Shown one piece after another: positions 29,606-57,360 of a stretch of DNA of 64,000 nt. Numbering within the stretch: the first letter of the stretch is position 1; each line of letters opens with the position of its first letter. The position numbers and the translations under genes are program-made. The stretch is from the IMG/VR virus record IMGVR_UViG_3300020608_000013, positions 62,001 through 126,000 of that record; one strand, written 5' to 3'. Below the pieces are notes generated by a model, which saw only the letters and a program-made list of their open reading frames with translations, was not told the DNA's origin and ran no database searches.

Positions 29606-29657
29606 TTAATTGCTCCTTGTTAATGAACGTTGCTAATGAGCAAGTAAGCTCATATTT

Positions 29658-29665
29658 ATAATATA
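29658..29665 (-). promoter_or_regulatory. Putative early promoter motif TATATTAT upstream of chmA
   Basis: AACCG-TATATTAT, 53 nt upstream of the chmA start. Confidence 0.55.
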
Positions 29666-29751: not shown

Positions 29752-30813
29752 ATGTTAAGAAAATATTTCGATAAAATAAGTGGTACACACGTTAGTACCT
29801 ACGCAAACGATGATTGGTTACGGCGTACCGTTAGTATATCATCAGCGCAAGTCCGACGATATTATATGTACTCAAACCATTATATAAAAACCGAGCATTT
29901 ACTCGTTAGGTTTTTACGTTCCCTTGACCTTCCAATTGAGAAAAGTAAAGAGGCTTATTTAAACCACGCTAAAGTACAAGGTATGCAACTGAGTAAAGTT
30001 TTCCAATTCACTTCACCGTTACAACTTGGTGTGCTCCACGATGATGTATTGTATAGTGGTAAACACCTTATCTACACTTTTAAAGGTAGTTCAAATAACC
30101 AGGTTAGTTGGTATCGACGAAAACCCATACGTTTAATCTATACGCGTGCAAACTACTTAGACTTCCCGCCTCTACACGGTATATTGCCGAGCACCATGAC
30201 AATCATATCGATTAACTTAATAGACCTTATGAGTATGTATTATGAATATAAGGTACACCGTTCTCGTTTAAACAGTCTTTACCGAAAAGTTCGACCCGAT
30301 TTACCTATTTCGGCAGGACATTTTATAAACACAATGATACTACCTTCCTTATCCGTCGATTCTTTTTTAAGTACAATAACAAACAATATTATTAAACCAA
30401 AATCGAGAGAGAAGGCAAATATACACTCTTTCACATTAAGGGAGTATACAAAAGAATTTGATGAAATTATTGAAAACTACCGACAGAATGTAGTGTTACA
30501 GGGTAGTGATTATAACACTGCTTTAGTTAACTACCCTAATTTACTCTACAAGCAACCTAATGGGTTCTTATCCTATAAACTACCCTTTAGTACCTTTAAC
30601 ACTATATCACGGCTTGTAGCTTACCTCATGCGGTTAGACCATATGTATAGTTATATCCATCTAGACCGTGAAGGATTTAAACAATCTAATGGTAGTGAAT
30701 ACTATTACCTCACTCGTTTCTCTCGTTTACTTAAACGTGATAACCAAATGAAGACCTTAGTAAGTGCCTTTAACGACACCGCTTTAGAAGAACGTTTTAA
30801 CTACTTTTTATAA
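29752..30813 (+). CDS. Conserved phiKZ gp52-like protein
   Basis: 353 aa, divergent from chmA; assigned by synteny. Confidence 0.55.
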   Translation: MLRKYFDKISGTHVSTYANDDWLRRTVSISSAQVRRYYMYSNHYIKTEHLLVRFLRSLDLPIEKSKEAYLNHAKVQGMQLSKVFQFTSPLQLGVLHDDVLYSGKHLIYTFKGSSNNQVSWYRRKPIRLIYTRANYLDFPPLHGILPSTMTIISINLIDLMSMYYEYKVHRSRLNSLYRKVRPDLPISAGHFINTMILPSLSVDSFLSTITNNIIKPKSREKANIHSFTLREYTKEFDEIIENYRQNVVLQGSDYNTALVNYPNLLYKQPNGFLSYKLPFSTFNTISRLVAYLMRLDHMYSYIHLDREGFKQSNGSEYYYLTRFSRLLKRDNQMKTLVSAFNDTALEERFNYFL

Positions 30814-30827
30814 AACGACGTAAAAAG

Positions 30828-30852
30828 CAGGGATCGCGAAACACGATCCCTG
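30828..30852 (-). terminator. Rho-independent terminator
   Basis: 9-bp stem CAGGGATCG/CGATCCCTG; AAAAAG to the left gives a U-tract on the minus strand. Confidence 0.65.
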
Positions 30853-31236
30853 AATATATGAACAACGTACAATTCCCCCATTGGCACTGTCTAAACCAGA
30901 GCTTGAGGAGTAGGACCGCAAAGTCACTACAATCTATTATATAAAATAGGTGTTGTTATTCGATAATCTAATCTAGACCTTCTCAACAACTAACATACTG
31001 GGTTATGCACAAACCTATCTAACATGATAAATCACACTTAGTGAATATTACTTATTATCTCTTTTTCTACTATACACTGGTAGTCAAACTTAGTGTAACC
31101 TAAACACTTTAACATTGTTGGATAATCTATACAGATGATTTACCATTAAACACTATTACTAAATTCATCTACACAATACCTATCCTTAGTCTATGTGTTA
31201 TTAATTCATCTTCTATCTGATTATACAAGATGGAAA

Positions 31237-31329
31237 ACTAAACTATAAATACTATCCTTTAAAACAGGGCTACCCCCCCCCCAAGTATGCTTAGTTTAGT
31301 GTTTGATGGCTCGTTCCTTCGTAACTCGT
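31237..31329. repeat. Structured poly-C element, copy 1
   Basis: ACTATCCT..AGGGCTAC10AAGT inside stem ACTAAACTA..ATACT/AGTAT..TAGTTTAGT, followed by box CTCGTTCCTTCGTAACTCGT (31310-31329). Confidence 0.8.
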
Positions 31330-31454
31330 ACAATACATTACAACACAAGGTATAAAAATACAGAGTGAAAAATAGGCAAGAAAAAAATAAGGACACAAAT
31401 AAAGTGTACTACGACATTACGCCATAGCACACTCGGTGGGTTAAGGTAACTTAC

Positions 31455-31940
31455 CTATTTACATAACGACGATCTTGTTTTTACCGAAAGTTGATAAACA
31501 TCGTCAACTAAATGGTAGGTCACGTTGAAGGTTTTAAAAACATCACCTCCAAAAGCTCTCATTAGGGCATCAACGTCTATGGGTGTACTACTCCCTATTA
31601 ACTCAGCCACATATTCAGTAGGCTCTTTAGTCTTCAGACCCACAAAATTTAAAAGGTCGTACTTGTTCACCCATCTACTAAAATACGGCTCTACCCGCAC
31701 TAACTCCTCATCCACCTTTCCTATATGGACTATCGCGTCTATACTCCCCTCATGCCATGTAATTTCAAAACGTTTAACTTCGATAGCATCGTAGCCATAG
31801 TGATTATCCAATACTTCATTTATACCATATACATCCCCTTCACCACACCCAGTGGTGACGACATCAATCAGTTCTAAGTGATCGAAATCGTATACTTCGC
31901 ACAATCCTTTACAAAGGTGGACTTTCATTGATTTAAACAT
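31455..31940 (-). CDS. Hypothetical acidic protein; the only convincing gene in the non-coding island
   Basis: 161 aa, GAG RBS and TATATTAT motif upstream. Confidence 0.7.
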   Translation of the reverse strand: MFKSMKVHLCKGLCEVYDFDHLELIDVVTTGCGEGDVYGINEVLDNHYGYDAIEVKRFEITWHEGSIDAIVHIGKVDEELVRVEPYFSRWVNKYDLLNFVGLKTKEPTEYVAELIGSSTPIDVDALMRAFGGDVFKTFNVTYHLVDDVYQLSVKTRSSLCK

Positions 31941-31987
31941 AACGCTATCTCTTAATGGTTATTGACTACTCCATTATAGTCATGTCT

Positions 31988-31995
31988 ATAATATA
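31988..31995 (-). promoter_or_regulatory. Putative early promoter motif TATATTAT
   Basis: 48 nt upstream of the ATG at 31940. Confidence 0.5.
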
Positions 31996-32421
31996 CCCGT
32001 ATACCAATCTATATTAACCACGATACTTCACTCGACAGACACAAGTAGACCACCTGTAACGCCTTAACGCTACTGATGGTTATACTACGTTCCAACAACT
32101 CACTCTACGCTATCTACAGTCCACGTTATAAGGTTTTCACAACCTAAGTGATGCCTAACCTCACTATCGTGTTATAAACCCTCTCCCTACTCAGTATACC
32201 TTTAACCTTTCTACGACGTTATTACAGTTACCTCACTTTGGTGTTATCAGACCAACCCTAATGACCCATAGGGCATAGGGATAGACATAACGGATACTGT
32301 ATACCTTATGGCTTAACGTTATCACTATGTTATACTTTACCTTAATCGTCTACCTTCGTCTTCCTATATGCACCCAAGGCACGGAAGGTATTATATATCA
32401 TCATGATTACACTATAGGTTA

Positions 32422-32518
32422 ACTATATTACGACACTATACACTATCCTCTTAAGAAGGGCTACCCCCCCCCCCAAGTCGTAATATAGTAGAAGAGGACT
32501 CGTTCCTTCGTAACTCGT
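32422..32518. repeat. Structured poly-C element, copy 2
   Basis: ACTATCCT..AGGGCTAC11AAGT inside perfect 13-bp stem ACTATATTACGAC/GTCGTAATATAGT, followed by the identical box CTCGTTCCTTCGTAACTCGT (32499-32518). Confidence 0.8.
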
Positions 32519-33239
32519 TCAACACATAAATAAAGATTGGGGTTGCTATTCGGTATGGGTAAAAAGTAGTCAACTTAAAATAGACCTCAGTAGTCATCTA
32601 CAGATGGTTAAAAAATAGGCTTAAGTAACACACCTCTGGTAGCGGTCTCACCCACCAGACTAGACTCATGTCGAGAAGGTAGTCTAGACTAACCAAGTGG
32701 TACACTAACACAATAACACAGTAAAGCTAGGTTTACCTACCAGTCTAGGCAGAAAGTCTAGAATGGGTAACAGAGTCACGCTTTGTGCTTAGGGAATATT
32801 CTCTACCAGGTTAATAAACGTGCTAATCGTTAAAGTTTCTGGCCAGTCTACTAACCCTTATATTTTTAATATTAGTTAGGTTATTTAGCCTTAGCTTACA
32901 CGCTTAGCGAAGGGGGTAGTTAATGTACCGTTATAAACCTCTCAGTGACGCTAGATTGATTTTTTAACCCTATAGGCAAGCTTACCTACTACCTAGCGTG
33001 GTGATGGGCACTATAGCCCTTTAAAACAGATTTAAGCAATCAGTGTACATACGCCATTGTCAATGACCTTTAACGAGTTTTTGGGTTAGTCACGACACTT
33101 TCTGGCCATTAGTTTCAGAGGACTACCGTAGACCTTATTCCAGCGATCGATCATTGATCAGACGATCTGGAATTAGTCCCTAACGGTGTCGTTTTTAAGG
33201 GTTTTATAGGGTGTCTAACTATTGACCATTTTAGGATAT

Positions 33240-33279
33240 ACCCTTCTATATATAATCTATAGATTATATATAGAAGGGT
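33240..33279. repeat. Perfect 40-bp palindrome with no spacer
   Basis: ACCCTTCTATATATAATCTA|TAGATTATATATAGAAGGGT equals its own reverse complement. Confidence 0.95.
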
Positions 33280-33354
33280 GGATGGAATCTGAAAAATGGT
33301 ACTTTTAGGTCGTGTTATACAAGTAGTCGCGCACGCCCGCATGGTTCCTATTTA

Positions 33355-33381
33355 GTTTATAATATCTAAGATATTATAAAC
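33355..33381. repeat. 13-1-13 palindrome flanked by GC-rich CGCG tracts
   Basis: GTTTATAATATCT-A-AGATATTATAAAC. Confidence 0.9.
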
Positions 33382-33432
33382 ATGCGCGAGCGCGTGGGCG
33401 CGAACGCGTGCGGTACTTTAGATTTTATTTCT

Positions 33433-34112
33433 AGCGATCGTGATGGTTTAATTCACCGACCTGTTAAAAAAATCAGGTGGAAGCGAAGAACATCGATCGC
33501 TCTTCAGTTCCAAGCTCAGCTCCCTTAGCGAGAGACTACACACCACCCCTGTCTTAAACCCCAGCCGCTGAAAGCTTGGGCTGGGGTTACTTCGATTCAA
33601 CCGTGGAAATTAATAATCACCACCGAGGGCCTTTTTCTAACCATCGAACCAACCCCCCGAAAATTTCAAAACCCTGAAACACAATGGTGAACGTCGTCAG
33701 GTTGAACACCATGACTCGTCCTGACTTAGGGGTCAGGACTTCGTGGCATACACAGACCTAGCCTATATCGCTCTGTAATCGATTCTAAGCCATTTTTTAC
33801 CTTGAGATGATTCATGTTAGGGGTAGGGGTAGATAAAGGCGATATGAGCTTCTGAGGGCTATAGAAAAAAGATAAACCAAACTAAACAAAACCGAAGGTT
33901 TATCACTAAAATCCCTCGAAGAGGGGATAGAGCGTCTGCAAGACAAAAGTATTATAACCCCGCGACCCCAGGCGAAAAAAAGCGCTGCGAGCGAAACTGG
34001 AGAAAACTGAAAGGTAGATTGTGCGCTATATGGGCGTGAGATCGCCATACAGACGTTTTAGGGGGCTAGCCTATGTTTTGGTATAGGTGGGTGTTATAAA
34101 GTGGCTTAAAAT
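33433..34112. ncRNA. Candidate structured non-coding RNA or ssDNA-structured origin segment
   Basis: Stems at 33433-33501, 33557-33588, 33684-33712, 33718-33739, 33871-33904 and 33911-33928, plus long-range pairing 33782-33796/34098-34112; no credible ORF. Confidence 0.4.
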
Positions 34113-34148
34113 GCATTCTACGGTATTTTAGCATTTTGAGTAATGTAG

Positions 34149-34168
34149 TGATAATTGATCAATTATCA
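34149..34168. promoter_or_regulatory. Perfect 20-bp palindrome, operator-like
   Basis: TGATAATTGATCAATTATCA, about 105 nt upstream of the 34275 gene. Confidence 0.6.
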
Positions 34169-34274
34169 TTCACTATTAAACGACAAATCACTTTGAAAAA
34201 TTTTAATGGTGTTGTGCTGTAGTACAAGATCGGTGTTTTGATAAATTGTTAAAAACAAAGGAGTTATTAAGGAA

Positions 34275-35108
34275 ATGGATACGATTAACGGTGTTATAAA
34301 TGCCATCAAGCATCAGATACCTCGGGCGATTCTAGAAGAAACGTTTAATGAACCTGATGCTGGGTTGTTACGCAGTATCGATGATGGAATTTACCGCAAT
34401 GTGATACTAGGTCGAGTCGTTCTAGATTGTAACCTAATCGGAGGTGAAGAGGCTTTAATTTACATAAGTCAAAGCCAAGCCGAACGGGTTAATGACATGG
34501 TGTCGCTTTATGATATACCTGATAGTGCGACACAAAACAGAGAGGTTATATCGCCACTTAGCGTGACTTATGCGACCTCATTAATGTCTAACGCAGGGTC
34601 TAGTCTTTCGATGGGTAGGGCACGGCACATGGGCGCTTCTCAATCGTCTGGTGGATGTAGTCAGAGTGAGCTTTTAAAGCAAGCTAAGAGTATGTTAGAC
34701 ACGATGAAACCATTACCCGTACTTTCCCACACTAACCTGAAAATGACCGCACGTAACGTACTAAGAGTGACGGATAGTAGTGGTATTTTTGGTGATTTCA
34801 TTCTTCGTTGTATCTTGGGTAATTCAGCGAATATGGAGAACCTCCAACCCTACTCTCGATTAAATTTCAACGAGCTTTGTGTACTGGCTTGTAAGGCGTA
34901 TTGTCATAACGAACTTGTCATTAAGCTGAATAAACAAAAAATTGCGTATGGGCAAGGTCTAGGGGTTATAAAGGATATTGTCGATGAGTATAGTGAGGCG
35001 AATGAACTTTACTTAGATTATCTGAAGAATGTGTGGACGACCGTTGCTTTTTGCAATGACCGCGATACCTACCGTAGATTTATCTCGTTGCAAATACCTA
35101 ATTTTTAA
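34275..35108 (+). CDS. Conserved phiKZ-like core protein
   Basis: 277 aa, AAGGA RBS; N-terminal AIKHQIPRAILEETF resembles a phiKZ-group core family as recalled. Confidence 0.6.
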   Translation: MDTINGVINAIKHQIPRAILEETFNEPDAGLLRSIDDGIYRNVILGRVVLDCNLIGGEEALIYISQSQAERVNDMVSLYDIPDSATQNREVISPLSVTYATSLMSNAGSSLSMGRARHMGASQSSGGCSQSELLKQAKSMLDTMKPLPVLSHTNLKMTARNVLRVTDSSGIFGDFILRCILGNSANMENLQPYSRLNFNELCVLACKAYCHNELVIKLNKQKIAYGQGLGVIKDIVDEYSEANELYLDYLKNVWTTVAFCNDRDTYRRFISLQIPNF

Positions 35109-35722: not shown

Positions 35723-35761
35723 AATGACATAGTTTAACTACTATGTCATTCATATAATATA
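35723..35761 (-). promoter_or_regulatory. TATATTAT motif (35754-35761) followed by an 11-bp leader hairpin (35723-35750)
   Basis: Stem AATGACATAGT/ACTATGTCATT lies immediately downstream of the motif on the minus strand. Confidence 0.5.
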
Positions 35762-39985: not shown

Positions 39986-40041
39986 TACATGTCCTCTTGT
40001 TTTTTAAAAAAAAGATGTTTGAGTTTAGTAAACTCATTATT

Positions 40042-40049
40042 ATAATATA
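40042..40049 (-). promoter_or_regulatory. Putative early promoter motif TATATTAT
   Basis: AAACC-TATATTAT upstream of 39985, followed by a small hairpin at 40020-40036. Confidence 0.55.
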
Positions 40050-44193: not shown

Positions 44194-44250
44194 AATACAG
44201 TCTTAAACCCATTAGTCTAAGACTGTATTATGAGTCGTAATTATAATATA
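44194..44250 (-). promoter_or_regulatory. TATATTAT motif (44243-44250) followed by a 12-bp leader hairpin (44194-44229)
   Basis: AAACG-TATATTAT; stem AATACAGTCTTA/TAAGACTGTATT. Confidence 0.5.
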
Positions 44251-57302: not shown

Positions 57303-57352
57303 TAGTTTTGTACTCCTTGTTCAGAATTGTGATTTTACAATGTGTCGTTAAT

Positions 57353-57360
57353 ATAATATA
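57353..57360 (-). promoter_or_regulatory. Putative early promoter motif TATATTAT
   Basis: GAACA-TATATTAT just downstream of a terminator and 51 nt upstream of the ATG at 57302. Confidence 0.55.

What the first reader, a model, noticed from the sequence alone, without database searches (positions are those of the whole stretch)
31237..32518. Two copies of a poly-C stem-loop element with different stems but conserved loop and downstream box
Both copies (31237-31329 and 32422-32518) carry ACTATCCT-N6/7-AGGGCTA-C10/11-AAGT and, 20-23 nt later, the identical 20-mer CTCGTTCCTTCGTAACTCGT. In each copy the core is enclosed by an inverted repeat, yet the stem sequences are unrelated (ACTAAACTA/TAGTTTAGT versus ACTATATTACGAC/GTCGTAATATAGT). 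Structure kept with sequence changed suggests selection on a folded ssDNA or RNA element. The minus strand shows a G10-11 run, and the box (ACGAGTTACGAAGGAACGAG) loosely recalls CGAG/CGAA-rich single-strand initiation sites of plasmids. Candidates: priming or nicking site, protein-binding RNA motif, or nuclear-shell tether. I know no named family for it.
Basis: partly seen in the sequence, partly recalled or inferred. Interest (0 to 1): 0.75.

Follow-up and report, generated by a model that had tools for sequence, protein, structure and literature searches.

The report
Three-copy hairpin–G-run element at phage origin
A 212-kb nucleus-forming-type jumbo phage carries exactly three copies of a hairpin with a 10-11-base G/C run and an invariant 20-base box, and they sit where the genome's strand bias flips, so they may mark where this phage, in which no primase was found, starts copying its DNA.

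Summary
Both copies carry the exact 20-mer and the AGGGCTA-C10/11-AAGT core, and each core is closed by a different inverted repeat. None of this is expected by chance.

- **Copy number.** A third copy lies outside the window, at genome 211,805-211,958. The three copies are the only repeats in the 212-kb genome.
- **Phage type.** It is a deep-branching chimallivirus-like phage: divergent family-B DNA polymerase, split RNA polymerase, DnaB-like helicase, and no detectable primase.
- **What the elements are not.** They are not the phage's promoter (TATATTATA), not canonical terminators, not coding, not in Rfam, and not found in any other public genome except near-identical strains.
- **Position.** Codon-third-position GC skew has a sharp, highly significant minimum exactly at copies 1 and 2, next to a 1.75-kb ORF-poor, palindrome-rich region. 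A second, weaker origin-like switch lies within about 2 kb of copy 3.
- **Flanks.** On the minus strand each element reads T-rich tract, box, hairpin with G run, then a 260-430-nt G-rich, C-poor noncoding tail.

Best reading (about 35%): an origin-associated element that works on the minus strand, probably by forming a G-run-anchored RNA-DNA hybrid that primes replication. This is inferred, not shown. Other noncoding-RNA or DNA-site roles remain open.

The parts
31237..31300 (-). Copy 1 stem-loop. Outer stem 31237-31245 / 31292-31300; inner ACT/AGT pairs; core AGGGCTA 31266-31272, C10 (G10 on the minus strand) 31273-31282, AAGT 31283-31286.
31310..31329 (-). Copy 1 invariant 20-nt box. On the minus strand it reads ACGAG-TT-ACGAA-GGA-ACGAG, three ACGAR pentamers.
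31330..31390 (-). A-rich (+) / T-rich (-) tract beside the box, shared at about 93% identity with copy 3. It marks the end of the copy 1/3 homology block.
30853..31236 (-). Copy 1 'tail': noncoding, and G-rich and C-poor on the minus strand. GC skew on the + strand was measured as -0.22 over 30814-31236, which includes the terminator hairpin. The tail ends at a minus-strand intrinsic terminator.
30828..30852 (-). Intrinsic-terminator-like hairpin with a U run on the minus strand only. It implies minus-strand transcription through copy 1 and its tail.
32422..32489 (-). Copy 2 stem-loop. 13-bp outer stem 32422-32434 / 32477-32489; core AGGGCTA 32457-32463, C11 32464-32474 (C9 in a related strain), AAGT 32475-32478.
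32499..32518 (-). Copy 2 invariant 20-nt box.
31996..32421 (-). Copy 2 'tail': 426 nt, noncoding, GC skew on the + strand -0.33 (minus strand G 114, C 58). It runs into the promoter of the 161-aa gene.
31987..31995 (-). Phage promoter motif TATATTATA that drives the 161-aa ORFan. The elements themselves lack this motif.
31455..31940 (-). 161-aa ORFan with its own promoter and its own terminator-like hairpin (31402-31434). Copies 2 and 1 flank it as direct repeats. It has the most extreme GC skew in the genome.
32519..34274 (.). ORF-poor region to the right of copy 2, where the GC3-skew minimum falls. It holds the 40-bp perfect palindrome 33240-33279, the palindrome 33355-33381 with divergent near-promoters, several hairpins, and a hypervariable stretch at 32590-33230.

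Best explanation
The three copies are cis-acting elements tied to the phage's replication origins, and the functional strand is the minus strand.

On that strand each unit reads as follows:
- a T-rich tract;
- a 20-nt box, ACGAGTTACGAAGGAACGAG, made of three ACGAR pentamers and likely a protein-recognition site;
- a hairpin that carries a G10-11 run;
- a 260-430-nt G-rich, C-poor noncoding tail.

Proposed mechanism, inferred from this anatomy. Transcription in the minus direction, which is the direction of most genes, crosses the G run. The rG:dC tract and the G-rich tail hold the RNA on the template as a persistent RNA-DNA hybrid. An RNase H-type activity of the replisome trims the RNA to a 3'-OH. 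The split family-B polymerase then extends it leftwards as a leading strand. The displaced G-rich strand, with its hairpin and box, is where the DnaB-like helicase is loaded to start the opposite fork.

Copies 1 and 2, together with the adjacent palindrome-rich region, would form the main origin. Copy 3 would be a secondary origin.

What is shown: the anatomy, the copy number, the conservation, and the position at the strand-bias switches. What is inferred: transcription through the element, hybrid formation and priming.
For: 1. Position at the main switch. Cumulative GC3 skew has a sharp global minimum right after the gene at genome 93,455-93,940, which lies between copies 1 and 2. The range is 874 against 332 +/- 74 for shuffled gene order (p < 1e-4). 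Minus-strand genes flip from about -0.12 on the left to +0.28 on the right.

2. Model fits. A strand-corrected two-breakpoint fit puts the origin-like switch in 93,940-96,275. Adding a second origin-like switch at 209.6-211 kb improves BIC from 130.6 to 120.4. Placing that switch at copy 3 itself costs almost nothing (RSS 296.4 against 292.7). T-over-A skew at third positions moves the same way, though weakly.

3. Uniqueness. These are the only repeats in the genome. There are exactly three copies and no degenerate extras.

4. Tails. All three have a C-poor tail on the same side, with + strand skew -0.22, -0.33 and -0.40. Only 2-5% of 300-nt windows are that low, and other long intergenic regions are not.

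5. Strand. Minus-strand folds are 5-9 kcal/mol more stable. The G run pairs with a conserved CCCU-pyrimidine tract through G-U pairs, which cannot form on the + strand. A strain variant in copy 3 changes a minus-strand U-G pair to U-A (read loose ends). A minus-strand terminator closes the copy 1 tail.

6. Conservation. The core and box are invariant across copies whose intervening stems are fully replaced, and across related strains. Only the C-run length varies, from 9 to 11.

7. Context. The region next to copy 2 holds a 40-bp perfect palindrome that stays perfect, at 44 bp, in another strain. [quoted passage not shown]

8. Literature. Chimalliviruses lack a known primase and have RNase H built into the polymerase. 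The authors of PMC13648698 speculate that RNA-DNA hybrids could provide initiation sites.
Against: - There are no RNA or replication-intermediate data. No usable RNA run was found, and only assembled contigs could be laid.
- No promoter was identified upstream of the box.
- The tails are only 19-27% G, which is below the roughly 40% that I recall being used for classical R-loop elongation zones.
- The skew dip near copy 3 is not significant on its own: prominence 113 against a shuffled range of about 330. It lies about 2 kb from the element. Copy 3 is also only about 11 kb from the antipode of the main minimum, so it could equally be called terminus-proximal.
- Copy 1 is inside the negative-skew block, not at a switch.
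- Fold energies are not exceptional.
- The RNase H domain itself was not detected here by Pfam.
- The closest cultured relative shows no skew structure and no such element.
- Skew minima only suggest origins; they do not prove them.
Confidence: 0.35

Rival explanations
1. The element is the conserved 5' domain of three paralogous noncoding RNAs, each about 350-550 nt on the minus strand (box, hairpin, G run, variable G-rich tail). Their job would be regulatory or protein-binding, for example a sponge or an export/stability signal in the phage nucleus, and not replication.
For: - A minus-strand terminator lies 400 nt beyond copy 1, after the upstream gene's own terminator-like hairpin.
- The G-U-dependent hairpin forms only on the minus strand.
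- The tails carry many SD-like AGGT/AAGGTA motifs without ORFs.
- The invariant box would suit a sequence-specific RNA-binding protein.
Against: - No promoter was found; the phage's TATATTATA motif is absent upstream of the box.
- Fold z-scores are insignificant.
- The three tails share no sequence.
- This reading does not explain why the elements coincide with the strand-bias switches.
- No RNA data are available.
Confidence: 0.2
2. It is a double-stranded DNA origin or organiser site. The three ACGAR pentamers of the box act as iteron-like binding sites for an initiator or helicase loader. The adjacent A/T-rich tract is the unwinding element. The hairpin forms only after melting. No RNA hybrid is involved.
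For: - The positional evidence is the same as for the best explanation.
- The box is invariant and internally repetitive.
- A strongly A-rich 60-125-nt tract lies beside the box in copies 1 and 3, with AT skew +0.44 and +0.48.
- Multi-origin phages that use repeated boxes are known; SPP1 oriL/oriR is an example I recall from memory.
Against: - It does not explain the G run, its pyrimidine partner, or the strand-specific C-poor tails.
- No candidate initiator gene was identified next to the elements: the neighbours are ORFans or a portal-associated protein.
- The loops are too large for cruciform extrusion.
Confidence: 0.15
3. The copies are passive repeats: remnants of a duplication or Campbell-type insertion that brought in the 161-aa gene cassette, or a small selfish element, kept similar by gene conversion. 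The hairpins would have arisen by template switching and would have no function of their own.
For: - Copies 2 and 1 are direct repeats flanking one complete promoter-gene-terminator unit.
- Copies 1 and 3 are 93% identical over 157 bp.
- Copy 3 is a mosaic: its inner left part resembles copy 2 and the rest resembles copy 1, which shows gene conversion.
- Only two independent stem versions exist.
Against: - The pattern conserved core, replaced stem, conserved box, diverged flank within 100 nt is not what conversion tracts produce.
- Both stems are individually improbable.
- There are no target-site duplications, no shared terminal repeats, and no transposase, tyrosine recombinase or serine recombinase.
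- The cassette is present in all strains, with no deletion joints.
- The shared compositional tails and the position at skew switches are left unexplained.
Confidence: 0.12
4. It is a transcription terminator, pause site or insulator for a phage RNA polymerase, placed between minus-strand transcription units.
For: - Each copy lies downstream of a minus-strand unit: 90-125 nt after the stop codon in copies 1 and 3.
- Each lies upstream of the next promoter, or at a convergent junction.
- From memory, G runs stop single-subunit polymerases at mitochondrial CSB II.
Against: - The phage uses ordinary GC-hairpin-plus-U-run terminators elsewhere, including just upstream of copy 1.
- The element has no U run after the hairpin, an AU-rich outer stem and a 42-46-nt loop.
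- There are only three copies for roughly 100 unit ends.
Confidence: 0.08
5. It is a short protein-coding gene on the minus strand, 45-48 aa, with the box read as ELRRNE and the G run as GGG.
For: ORFs 31259-31396(-) and 32451-32597(-) share the same frame through the box and the G run.
Against: - There is no Shine-Dalgarno sequence and no consistent start. The copy 3 ORF starts later, at a TTG.
- G10 against G11 shifts the frame after the run, so the C-termini are unrelated.
- All 20 box positions are identical, third codon positions included, while the flanks have diverged.
Confidence: 0.02

Closest known systems
Mitochondrial H-strand origin: LSP transcript, conserved sequence block II (G6AG8) and the R-loop primer (PMC3488243, PMC6317783)
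   Same: - A length-polymorphic G run lies on the RNA-like strand inside a noncoding control region.
- Short invariant sequence blocks sit beside hypervariable stretches.
- The replication system lacks a classical origin primase and uses RNase H processing.
- The run's position coincides with the start of leading-strand synthesis as inferred from skew.
   Different: - No promoter is mapped here.
- The polymerases are multisubunit phage enzymes.
- The G run sits inside a large hairpin closed by a variable stem.
- There are three copies per genome.
- No hybrid or G-quadruplex has been demonstrated.
ColE1 RNA II preprimer and phage T4 oriF/oriG R-loop origins (from general knowledge)
   Same: - A noncoding transcript several hundred nt long stays hybridised through G/C-rich contacts and is cut by RNase H to prime the leading strand.
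- T4 uses several such origins in one genome.
   Different: - There is no sequence similarity and no antisense regulator is evident.
- The tails are only moderately G-rich (19-27% G).
- T4 origins are defined by a middle promoter plus an unwinding element, not by a conserved hairpin and box.
Single-strand initiation (ssi) / primosome assembly sites of plasmids and ssDNA phages (RSF1010 ssiA/ssiB, G4 and phiX types; from general knowledge)
   Same: Both are orientation-specific hairpins with conserved sequence blocks, located at or near an origin.
   Different: - Those sites are recognised by DnaG, PriA or a plasmid primase, none of which was found here.
- RSF1010 sites face each other on opposite strands, whereas these all face the same way.
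- No sequence relationship could be tested.
Multi-site phage origins with repeated initiator boxes (SPP1 oriL/oriR; HSV oriS/oriL palindromes; from general knowledge)
   Same: - A few dispersed copies of a short conserved box lie next to an A/T-rich tract.
- An A/T-centred perfect palindrome (33240-33279) lies in the same control region.
   Different: - No initiator protein has been identified.
- The box carries three 5-nt repeats rather than long iterons.
- The G-run hairpin has no counterpart in those origins.

Membership tests
Any Rfam RNA family | Covariance-model score at or above the family's gathering threshold | tested here: not met
   There were 0 matches over the whole window at gathering thresholds. 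In 30800-34300, only chance-level hits appeared at E >= 0.4, and none lay on the core of the elements.
R-loop-primed replication origin (ColE1 RNA II / mitochondrial CSB II / T4 ori type) | Located where leading-strand synthesis diverges (origin) | tested here: met
   The GC3-skew global minimum and the best-fit origin breakpoint fall in genome 93,940-96,275, at copies 1 and 2. A second switch lies within about 2 kb of copy 3. This is indirect, compositional evidence only.
R-loop-primed replication origin (ColE1 RNA II / mitochondrial CSB II / T4 ori type) | G cluster on the RNA-like strand, followed by a G-rich stretch that stabilises the hybrid | tested here: inconclusive
   A G10-11 run is present in all copies. 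The tails have G over C by skew 0.22-0.40 but are only 19-27% G.
R-loop-primed replication origin (ColE1 RNA II / mitochondrial CSB II / T4 ori type) | A promoter that drives transcription across the element, and a persistent RNA-DNA hybrid processed by RNase H | not testable with these tools
   No promoter motif lies upstream of the box. No RNA or DRIP data were available. A protein of the Rhc-like ribonuclease family is present, but its RNase H domain was not detected.
Plasmid/ssDNA-phage ssi (primosome assembly) sites | Recognition by a cognate primase or PriA; in RSF1010-type origins, two sites on opposite strands | tested here: not met
   No DnaG-type or Prim-Pol primase was detected. All three copies lie in the same orientation. 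Function on ssDNA could not be tested.
Intrinsic (factor-independent) terminator | GC-rich stem with a short loop, immediately followed by a U run | tested here: not met
   The scanner finds terminators at 31434-31402(-) and 30852-30828(-), but not at the elements. The element stems are AU-rich, the loops are 42-46 nt, and no U run follows.
Phage early-type promoter of this genome (TATATTATA) | Presence of the motif shared by about 20 intergenic sites | tested here: not met
   Mapping the motif with up to 1 mismatch found no site inside any element.
Integron attC or other site-specific recombination site | Conserved core sites (RYYYAAC / GTTRRRY) at the stem ends and a cognate recombinase | tested here: not met
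   The stems read ACTAAACTA/TAGTTTAGT and ACTATATTACGAC/GTCGTAATATAGT, and copy 2 lacks the AAC/GTT core. No tyrosine or serine recombinase was found. No excision joints appeared in four runs.
MITE / small transposable element | Terminal inverted repeats shared by all copies, flanked by target-site duplications | tested here: not met
   The inner stem sequences differ between the two stem versions. The three-copy alignment with flanks shows no duplicated sequence at the copy borders, though this was judged by eye and no dedicated search was run. There are only three copies.

The most novel reading that the evidence does not exclude
These elements are the long-sought initiation sites of chimallivirus-type replication. 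In this reading a G-run hairpin plus box converts an ordinary transcript into a persistent RNA-DNA hybrid. The polymerase-associated RNase H trims that hybrid into the leading-strand primer, which would explain how these phages replicate without a primase. A bolder variant is that the box of copy 3, where the assembled contig happens to begin, also marks a physical genome end from which replication proceeds inward.
Probability: 0.22. Interest if true: 0.85.

Novelty: new variant of a known kind. Interest (0 to 1): 0.58.

Why it matters
Nucleus-forming jumbo phages have a distinctive replisome: a split family-B polymerase, an RNase H-clamp subunit and a DnaB-like helicase, with no known primase and no mapped origin in the sources I found. 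The authors of that work could only speculate that RNA-DNA hybrids start replication.

This genome offers a concrete, compact and testable candidate. It has three copies of a roughly 100-150-bp element with a G run, an invariant box and a strand-specific G-rich tail, placed at the origin-like switches of strand composition.

If the link holds, it would give the first cis-acting origin determinant for this group and a natural substrate for reconstituting initiation. If it fails, the element is still an unusually clean example of a lineage-specific structured repeat.

Tried and rejected
- **Other genomes.** Exact scans for the box and the core in IMG/VR, JGI metagenomes and 185,579 prokaryote genomes gave only chance hits. 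blastn of the region against GenBank phages found nothing.
- **Relatives found through proteins.** The nearest are too distant to help: about 31% identity to one 206-kb IMG/VR contig and to Bacillus phage AgentSmith. The element profile finds nothing in either. AgentSmith shows no skew structure, and the IMG/VR contig has a different repeat family.
- **Neighbouring proteins.**
  - The 161-aa gene is an ORFan with a poor model.
  - The genes beside copy 3 have no annotation.
  - The 353-aa neighbour's weak Cdc13_N hint was not borne out: a confident AlphaFold model (pLDDT 87) has no PDB fold match.
  - DUF7484 is a PHIKZ042-like portal-associated protein.
- **Known sequence classes.** No tRNAs or tmRNA. 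Sigma-70-like promoter matches were below the shuffled expectation.
- **Phase-variable promoter spacer.** The hexamers do not fit on either strand, by inspection.
- **Small ORF across the box.** Rejected.
- **Specific motif in the tails.** None found beyond general C depletion.
- **RNA evidence.** No usable RNA run was found.
- **Boundary idea.** I tested whether the box is the edge between conserved and diverged sequence among strains. The jump in divergence is at about 32590, 70 nt beyond the box.
Full report
**1. Observation**

The 20-mer CTCGTTCCTTCGTAACTCGT lies at 31310-31329 and 32499-32518. AGGGCTA followed by C10 or C11 and AAGT lies at 31266-31286 and 32457-32478. Neither motif has any other match in the window even with 3 mismatches, and shuffled sequence gives none.

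Each core is closed by an inverted repeat. Copy 1 has 9 perfect pairs (31237-31245 / 31292-31300) plus inner ACT/AGT pairs. Copy 2 has 13 perfect pairs (32422-32434 / 32477-32489). Across the whole genome there are only 37 perfect inverted repeats of 9 nt or more with 30-60-nt loops, and the 13-nt one is unique. Two different stems centred on the same core are therefore far from chance.

**2. The wider picture**

The window is bases 62,001-126,000 of a 212,020-bp virus record. Its 141-bp terminal repeat equals what I recall as a common assembler word size, so I treat the record as a circular assembly.

A third copy lies at 211,805-211,958 and runs on into 1-79. Self-comparison shows that these three copies are the only repeats in the genome. 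A profile search finds no degenerate extras.

Copies 1 and 3 are 93% identical over 157 bp and share the outer stem. Copy 2 is about 80% identical and has a different stem. Copy 3 is a mosaic: its inner left part resembles copy 2 and the rest resembles copy 1. The copies therefore exchange sequence.

Only the core (AGGGCTA-Cn-AAGT), the 20-nt box and a few neighbouring bases are invariant. The stem and spacer between them are replaced. That pattern points to selection on two separate blocks plus a hairpin, not to a single conversion tract.

**3. The phage**

- It encodes a divergent family-B DNA polymerase (PF20286), a second polymerase-like protein, split RNA-polymerase beta subunits, a DnaB-like helicase and a protein of the chimallivirus 'ribonuclease' family.
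- No DnaG-type or Prim-Pol primase was detected, and no tyrosine or serine recombinase.
- The closest GenBank relative, Bacillus phage AgentSmith, is only 31% identical in the polymerase.
- Near-identical strains occur in biofilm, hydrothermal-vent and hot-spring metagenomes. No intermediate relatives were found. Comparative evidence is therefore limited to strain variation.

**4. What the elements are not**

- **Not the promoter.** The genome has a clear promoter motif, TATATTATA, often followed by a hairpin. It has about 20 exact intergenic copies, nearly all on the minus strand. The elements lack it.
- **Not ordinary terminators.** Ordinary GC-hairpin-plus-U-run terminators are common. One follows the 161-aa gene just upstream of copy 1 (31434-31402, minus strand) and another closes the copy 1 tail (30852-30828, minus strand). 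The elements have AU-rich stems, 42-46-nt loops and no U run.
- **Not unusually stable folds.** Their fold energies are not better than shuffled sequence.
- **Not a known RNA family.** Rfam and tRNA searches are empty.
- **Not coding.** Small minus-strand ORFs read the box as ELRRNE. They have no ribosome-binding site, inconsistent starts, frames that diverge after the G10 or G11 run, and 20 of 20 identical bases including third positions. I reject coding.

**5. Context on the minus strand**

Most genes run on the minus strand. Read that way, each unit is a T-rich tract, the box (ACGAG-TT-ACGAA-GGA-ACGAG), a 9-10-nt spacer, the hairpin with G10-11, and then a noncoding tail.

- **Copy 1.** It lies 125 nt beyond the stop codon of the 161-aa ORFan, between convergent genes. 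Its tail ends at a terminator whose U run is on the minus strand only.
- **Copy 2.** It lies downstream of the 1.75-kb ORF-poor region. A 426-nt tail follows it and runs into the ORFan's promoter at 31987-31995.
- **Copy 3.** It lies 87 nt beyond a 398-aa gene. A 263-nt tail follows it and runs into the next promoter.

Copies 2 and 1 therefore flank one complete promoter-gene-terminator unit as direct repeats.

The three tails share no sequence, but all are C-poor and G-rich on the minus strand. GC skew on the + strand is -0.22, -0.33 and -0.40, values reached by only 2-5% of 300-nt windows and not by other long intergenic regions. The other flank is A-rich on the + strand.

**6. Which strand**

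- The minus-strand folds are 5-9 kcal/mol more stable. The G run pairs with a conserved CCCU-pyrimidine tract through G-U pairs that become C-A mismatches on the + strand.
- A strain variant in copy 3 turns a minus-strand U-G pair into U-A.
- The terminator beyond copy 1 is minus-specific.
- One variant at the last pair of the copy 1 stem (31237 A>G) would instead suit the + strand.

The balance favours the minus strand.

**7. Position in the genome**

I measured G-versus-C skew at codon third positions, referred to the + strand.

- Minus-strand genes flip from about -0.12 left of 94 kb to +0.28 right of it.
- The cumulative curve has a sharp V-shaped global minimum right after the gene at 93,455-93,940, between copies 1 and 2. 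Its range is 874, against 332 +/- 74 for shuffled gene order.
- A regression that corrects for gene strand places the origin-like breakpoint in 93,940-96,275 and the terminus-like one near 41.3 kb.
- Adding a second pair of breakpoints flips 194.7 to 209.6-211 kb and improves BIC from 130.6 to 120.4. Putting that second origin-like switch at copy 3 itself is almost as good.
- T-over-A skew moves the same way but weakly.

Both origin-like switches of strand composition therefore coincide with the only repeat family in the genome.

Caveats apply. The second dip is not significant alone. It is about 2 kb from copy 3. Copy 3 is also near the antipode of the main minimum. Skew is indirect evidence.

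**8. The neighbouring ORF-poor region (32519-34274)**

- It contains a 40-bp perfect palindrome (33240-33279). In another strain this becomes a 44-bp perfect palindrome through a TA insertion in both arms.
- A second palindrome (33355-33381) carries divergent near-consensus promoters between GC-rich blocks.
- It also has several hairpins, three of the genome's eight AGCGATCG sites, and five AGTCTAG repeats.
- A stretch at 32590-33230 differs by 10-30% between strains that are otherwise under 2% apart.

These points rest. The mix of conserved blocks and hypervariable sequence at the skew minimum is what a replication control region would look like.

**9. Interpretation**

Recent work shows that chimalliviruses have no recognisable primase or clamp and that their polymerase carries an RNase H-clamp subunit. 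Its authors speculate that RNA-DNA hybrids may provide initiation sites (PMC13648698; bioRxiv 10.64898/2026.09.30.755723).

The closest mechanistic analogue is the mitochondrial H-strand origin. There a transcript stalls at a length-polymorphic G run (CSB II), stays hybridised, and is processed by RNase H into the primer (PMC3488243, PMC6317783). ColE1 RNA II and the T4 R-loop origins are further analogues from general knowledge.

I therefore rank first, at about 35%, an origin-associated element acting on the minus strand. In this reading the G run and G-rich tail hold a transcript on the template as a primer, while the box and hairpin on the displaced strand recruit the helicase or another factor.

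None of the dynamic steps is shown. No promoter was found in front of the box, and the tails are less G-rich than classical R-loop zones.

The rivals are:
- a noncoding RNA with another role (20%);
- a purely duplex initiator-binding site (15%);
- passive or selfish repeats (12%);
- a terminator or insulator (8%);
- a small ORF (2%).

A recombination (att-type) site scores lower still and was not entered as a separate rival. No recombinase was found and no excision joints appeared.

**10. Verdict**

The finding is real, statistically solid and wider than reported, with three copies that are the only repeats in the genome. It belongs to no named family.

Its function is not established. The replication-origin reading rests on position, anatomy and the biology of the phage group.

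I class it as a new variant of a known kind, an origin-linked hairpin/G-run element. Interest is moderate to high because it would make the open question of how nucleus-forming phages start replication directly testable.

Noticed in passing
window 29657-29665, 31987-31995, 35753-35761, 40041-40049, 44242-44250, 57352-57360 (all minus strand), plus about 14 more sites elsewhere in the genome: There is a clear phage promoter motif, [CG][AG]TATATTATA(A). It has about 20 exact intergenic copies, nearly all on the minus strand, and is often followed within 10-20 nt by a perfect hairpin. It is probably the early (virion RNA polymerase) promoter of this lineage.
   Followed up: partly
window 33240-33279: This is a 40-bp perfect A/T-centred palindrome in the ORF-poor region at the skew minimum. 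In a related strain (Logan ERR15087779) a TA is added in both arms, giving a perfect 44-bp palindrome. That is a compensated change and points to selection on the symmetry.
   Followed up: partly
window 33320-33415: The palindrome at 33355-33381 carries two divergent near-consensus promoters (GATATTATAAA on each strand). GC-rich blocks bracket it. One strain has a 14-nt deletion in the right-hand block.
   Followed up: no
window 32590-33230: This noncoding stretch differs by 10-30%, with many 1-2-nt indels, between strains that are under 2% apart on both sides. The predicted hairpins are not kept, so it behaves as a hypervariable region rather than a structured RNA.
   Followed up: partly
genome position 1 (outside the window; copy 3 box): The assembled contig begins exactly at the first base of the 20-nt box of copy 3. 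The base just before the box is polymorphic between copies and strains (G/A, as at 31309). A graph branch at that site may explain the start, but a real physical end was not excluded.
   Followed up: partly
window 32650-32770 and 33141-33501: Five AGTCTAG repeats fall within about 120 nt, and three of the genome's eight AGCGATCG sites fall within 360 nt. They look like iterons, but the AGTCTAG copies are not all kept in the variant strain.
   Followed up: partly
whole genome; terminus-like switches near genome 41.3 kb and 194.7 kb: The strand-composition domains are very unequal: about 100 kb and 53 kb around the main minimum, and about 15 kb and 43 kb around the second. This is unlike a simple two-replichore circle.
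   Followed up: partly
window 29752-30813 (+): This is a lone + strand gene beside copy 1. It belongs to a conserved family of about 360-aa proteins (phrog_3938, about 120 clusters). The AlphaFold model is confident (pLDDT 87, pTM 0.88), but no solved structure matches it.
   Followed up: yes
window 34275-35108 (+): This DUF7484 protein is related to PHIKZ042 and to portal-associated proteins gp36/gp233 in solved virion structures (PDB 9xpe, 36za, 11ed; E about 1e-21 to 1e-23).
   Followed up: partly
window 31455-31940 (-): The 161-aa ORFan between copies 1 and 2 has the most extreme GC skew of any 300-nt window in the genome, down to -0.44 on the + strand.
   Followed up: no
L030 23-34 and L032 1901-1910 (Bacillus phage AgentSmith, MW749006.1): The closest cultured relative has only two long G/C homopolymers: a G12 run 23 nt from the start of its record, and a C10 run at 101,901. 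Whether these relate to genome ends or origins was not examined.
   Followed up: no
genome 7399-8832 (+), locus L039 100-1533: This 477-aa protein matches the phage 'ribonuclease' family phrog_3265 over its C-terminal half (E 8.5e-19). It is the same size as AgentSmith's annotated RNase HI, so it is a candidate Rhc (RNase H-clamp) homologue. Its RNase H domain is not recognised by Pfam.
   Followed up: partly
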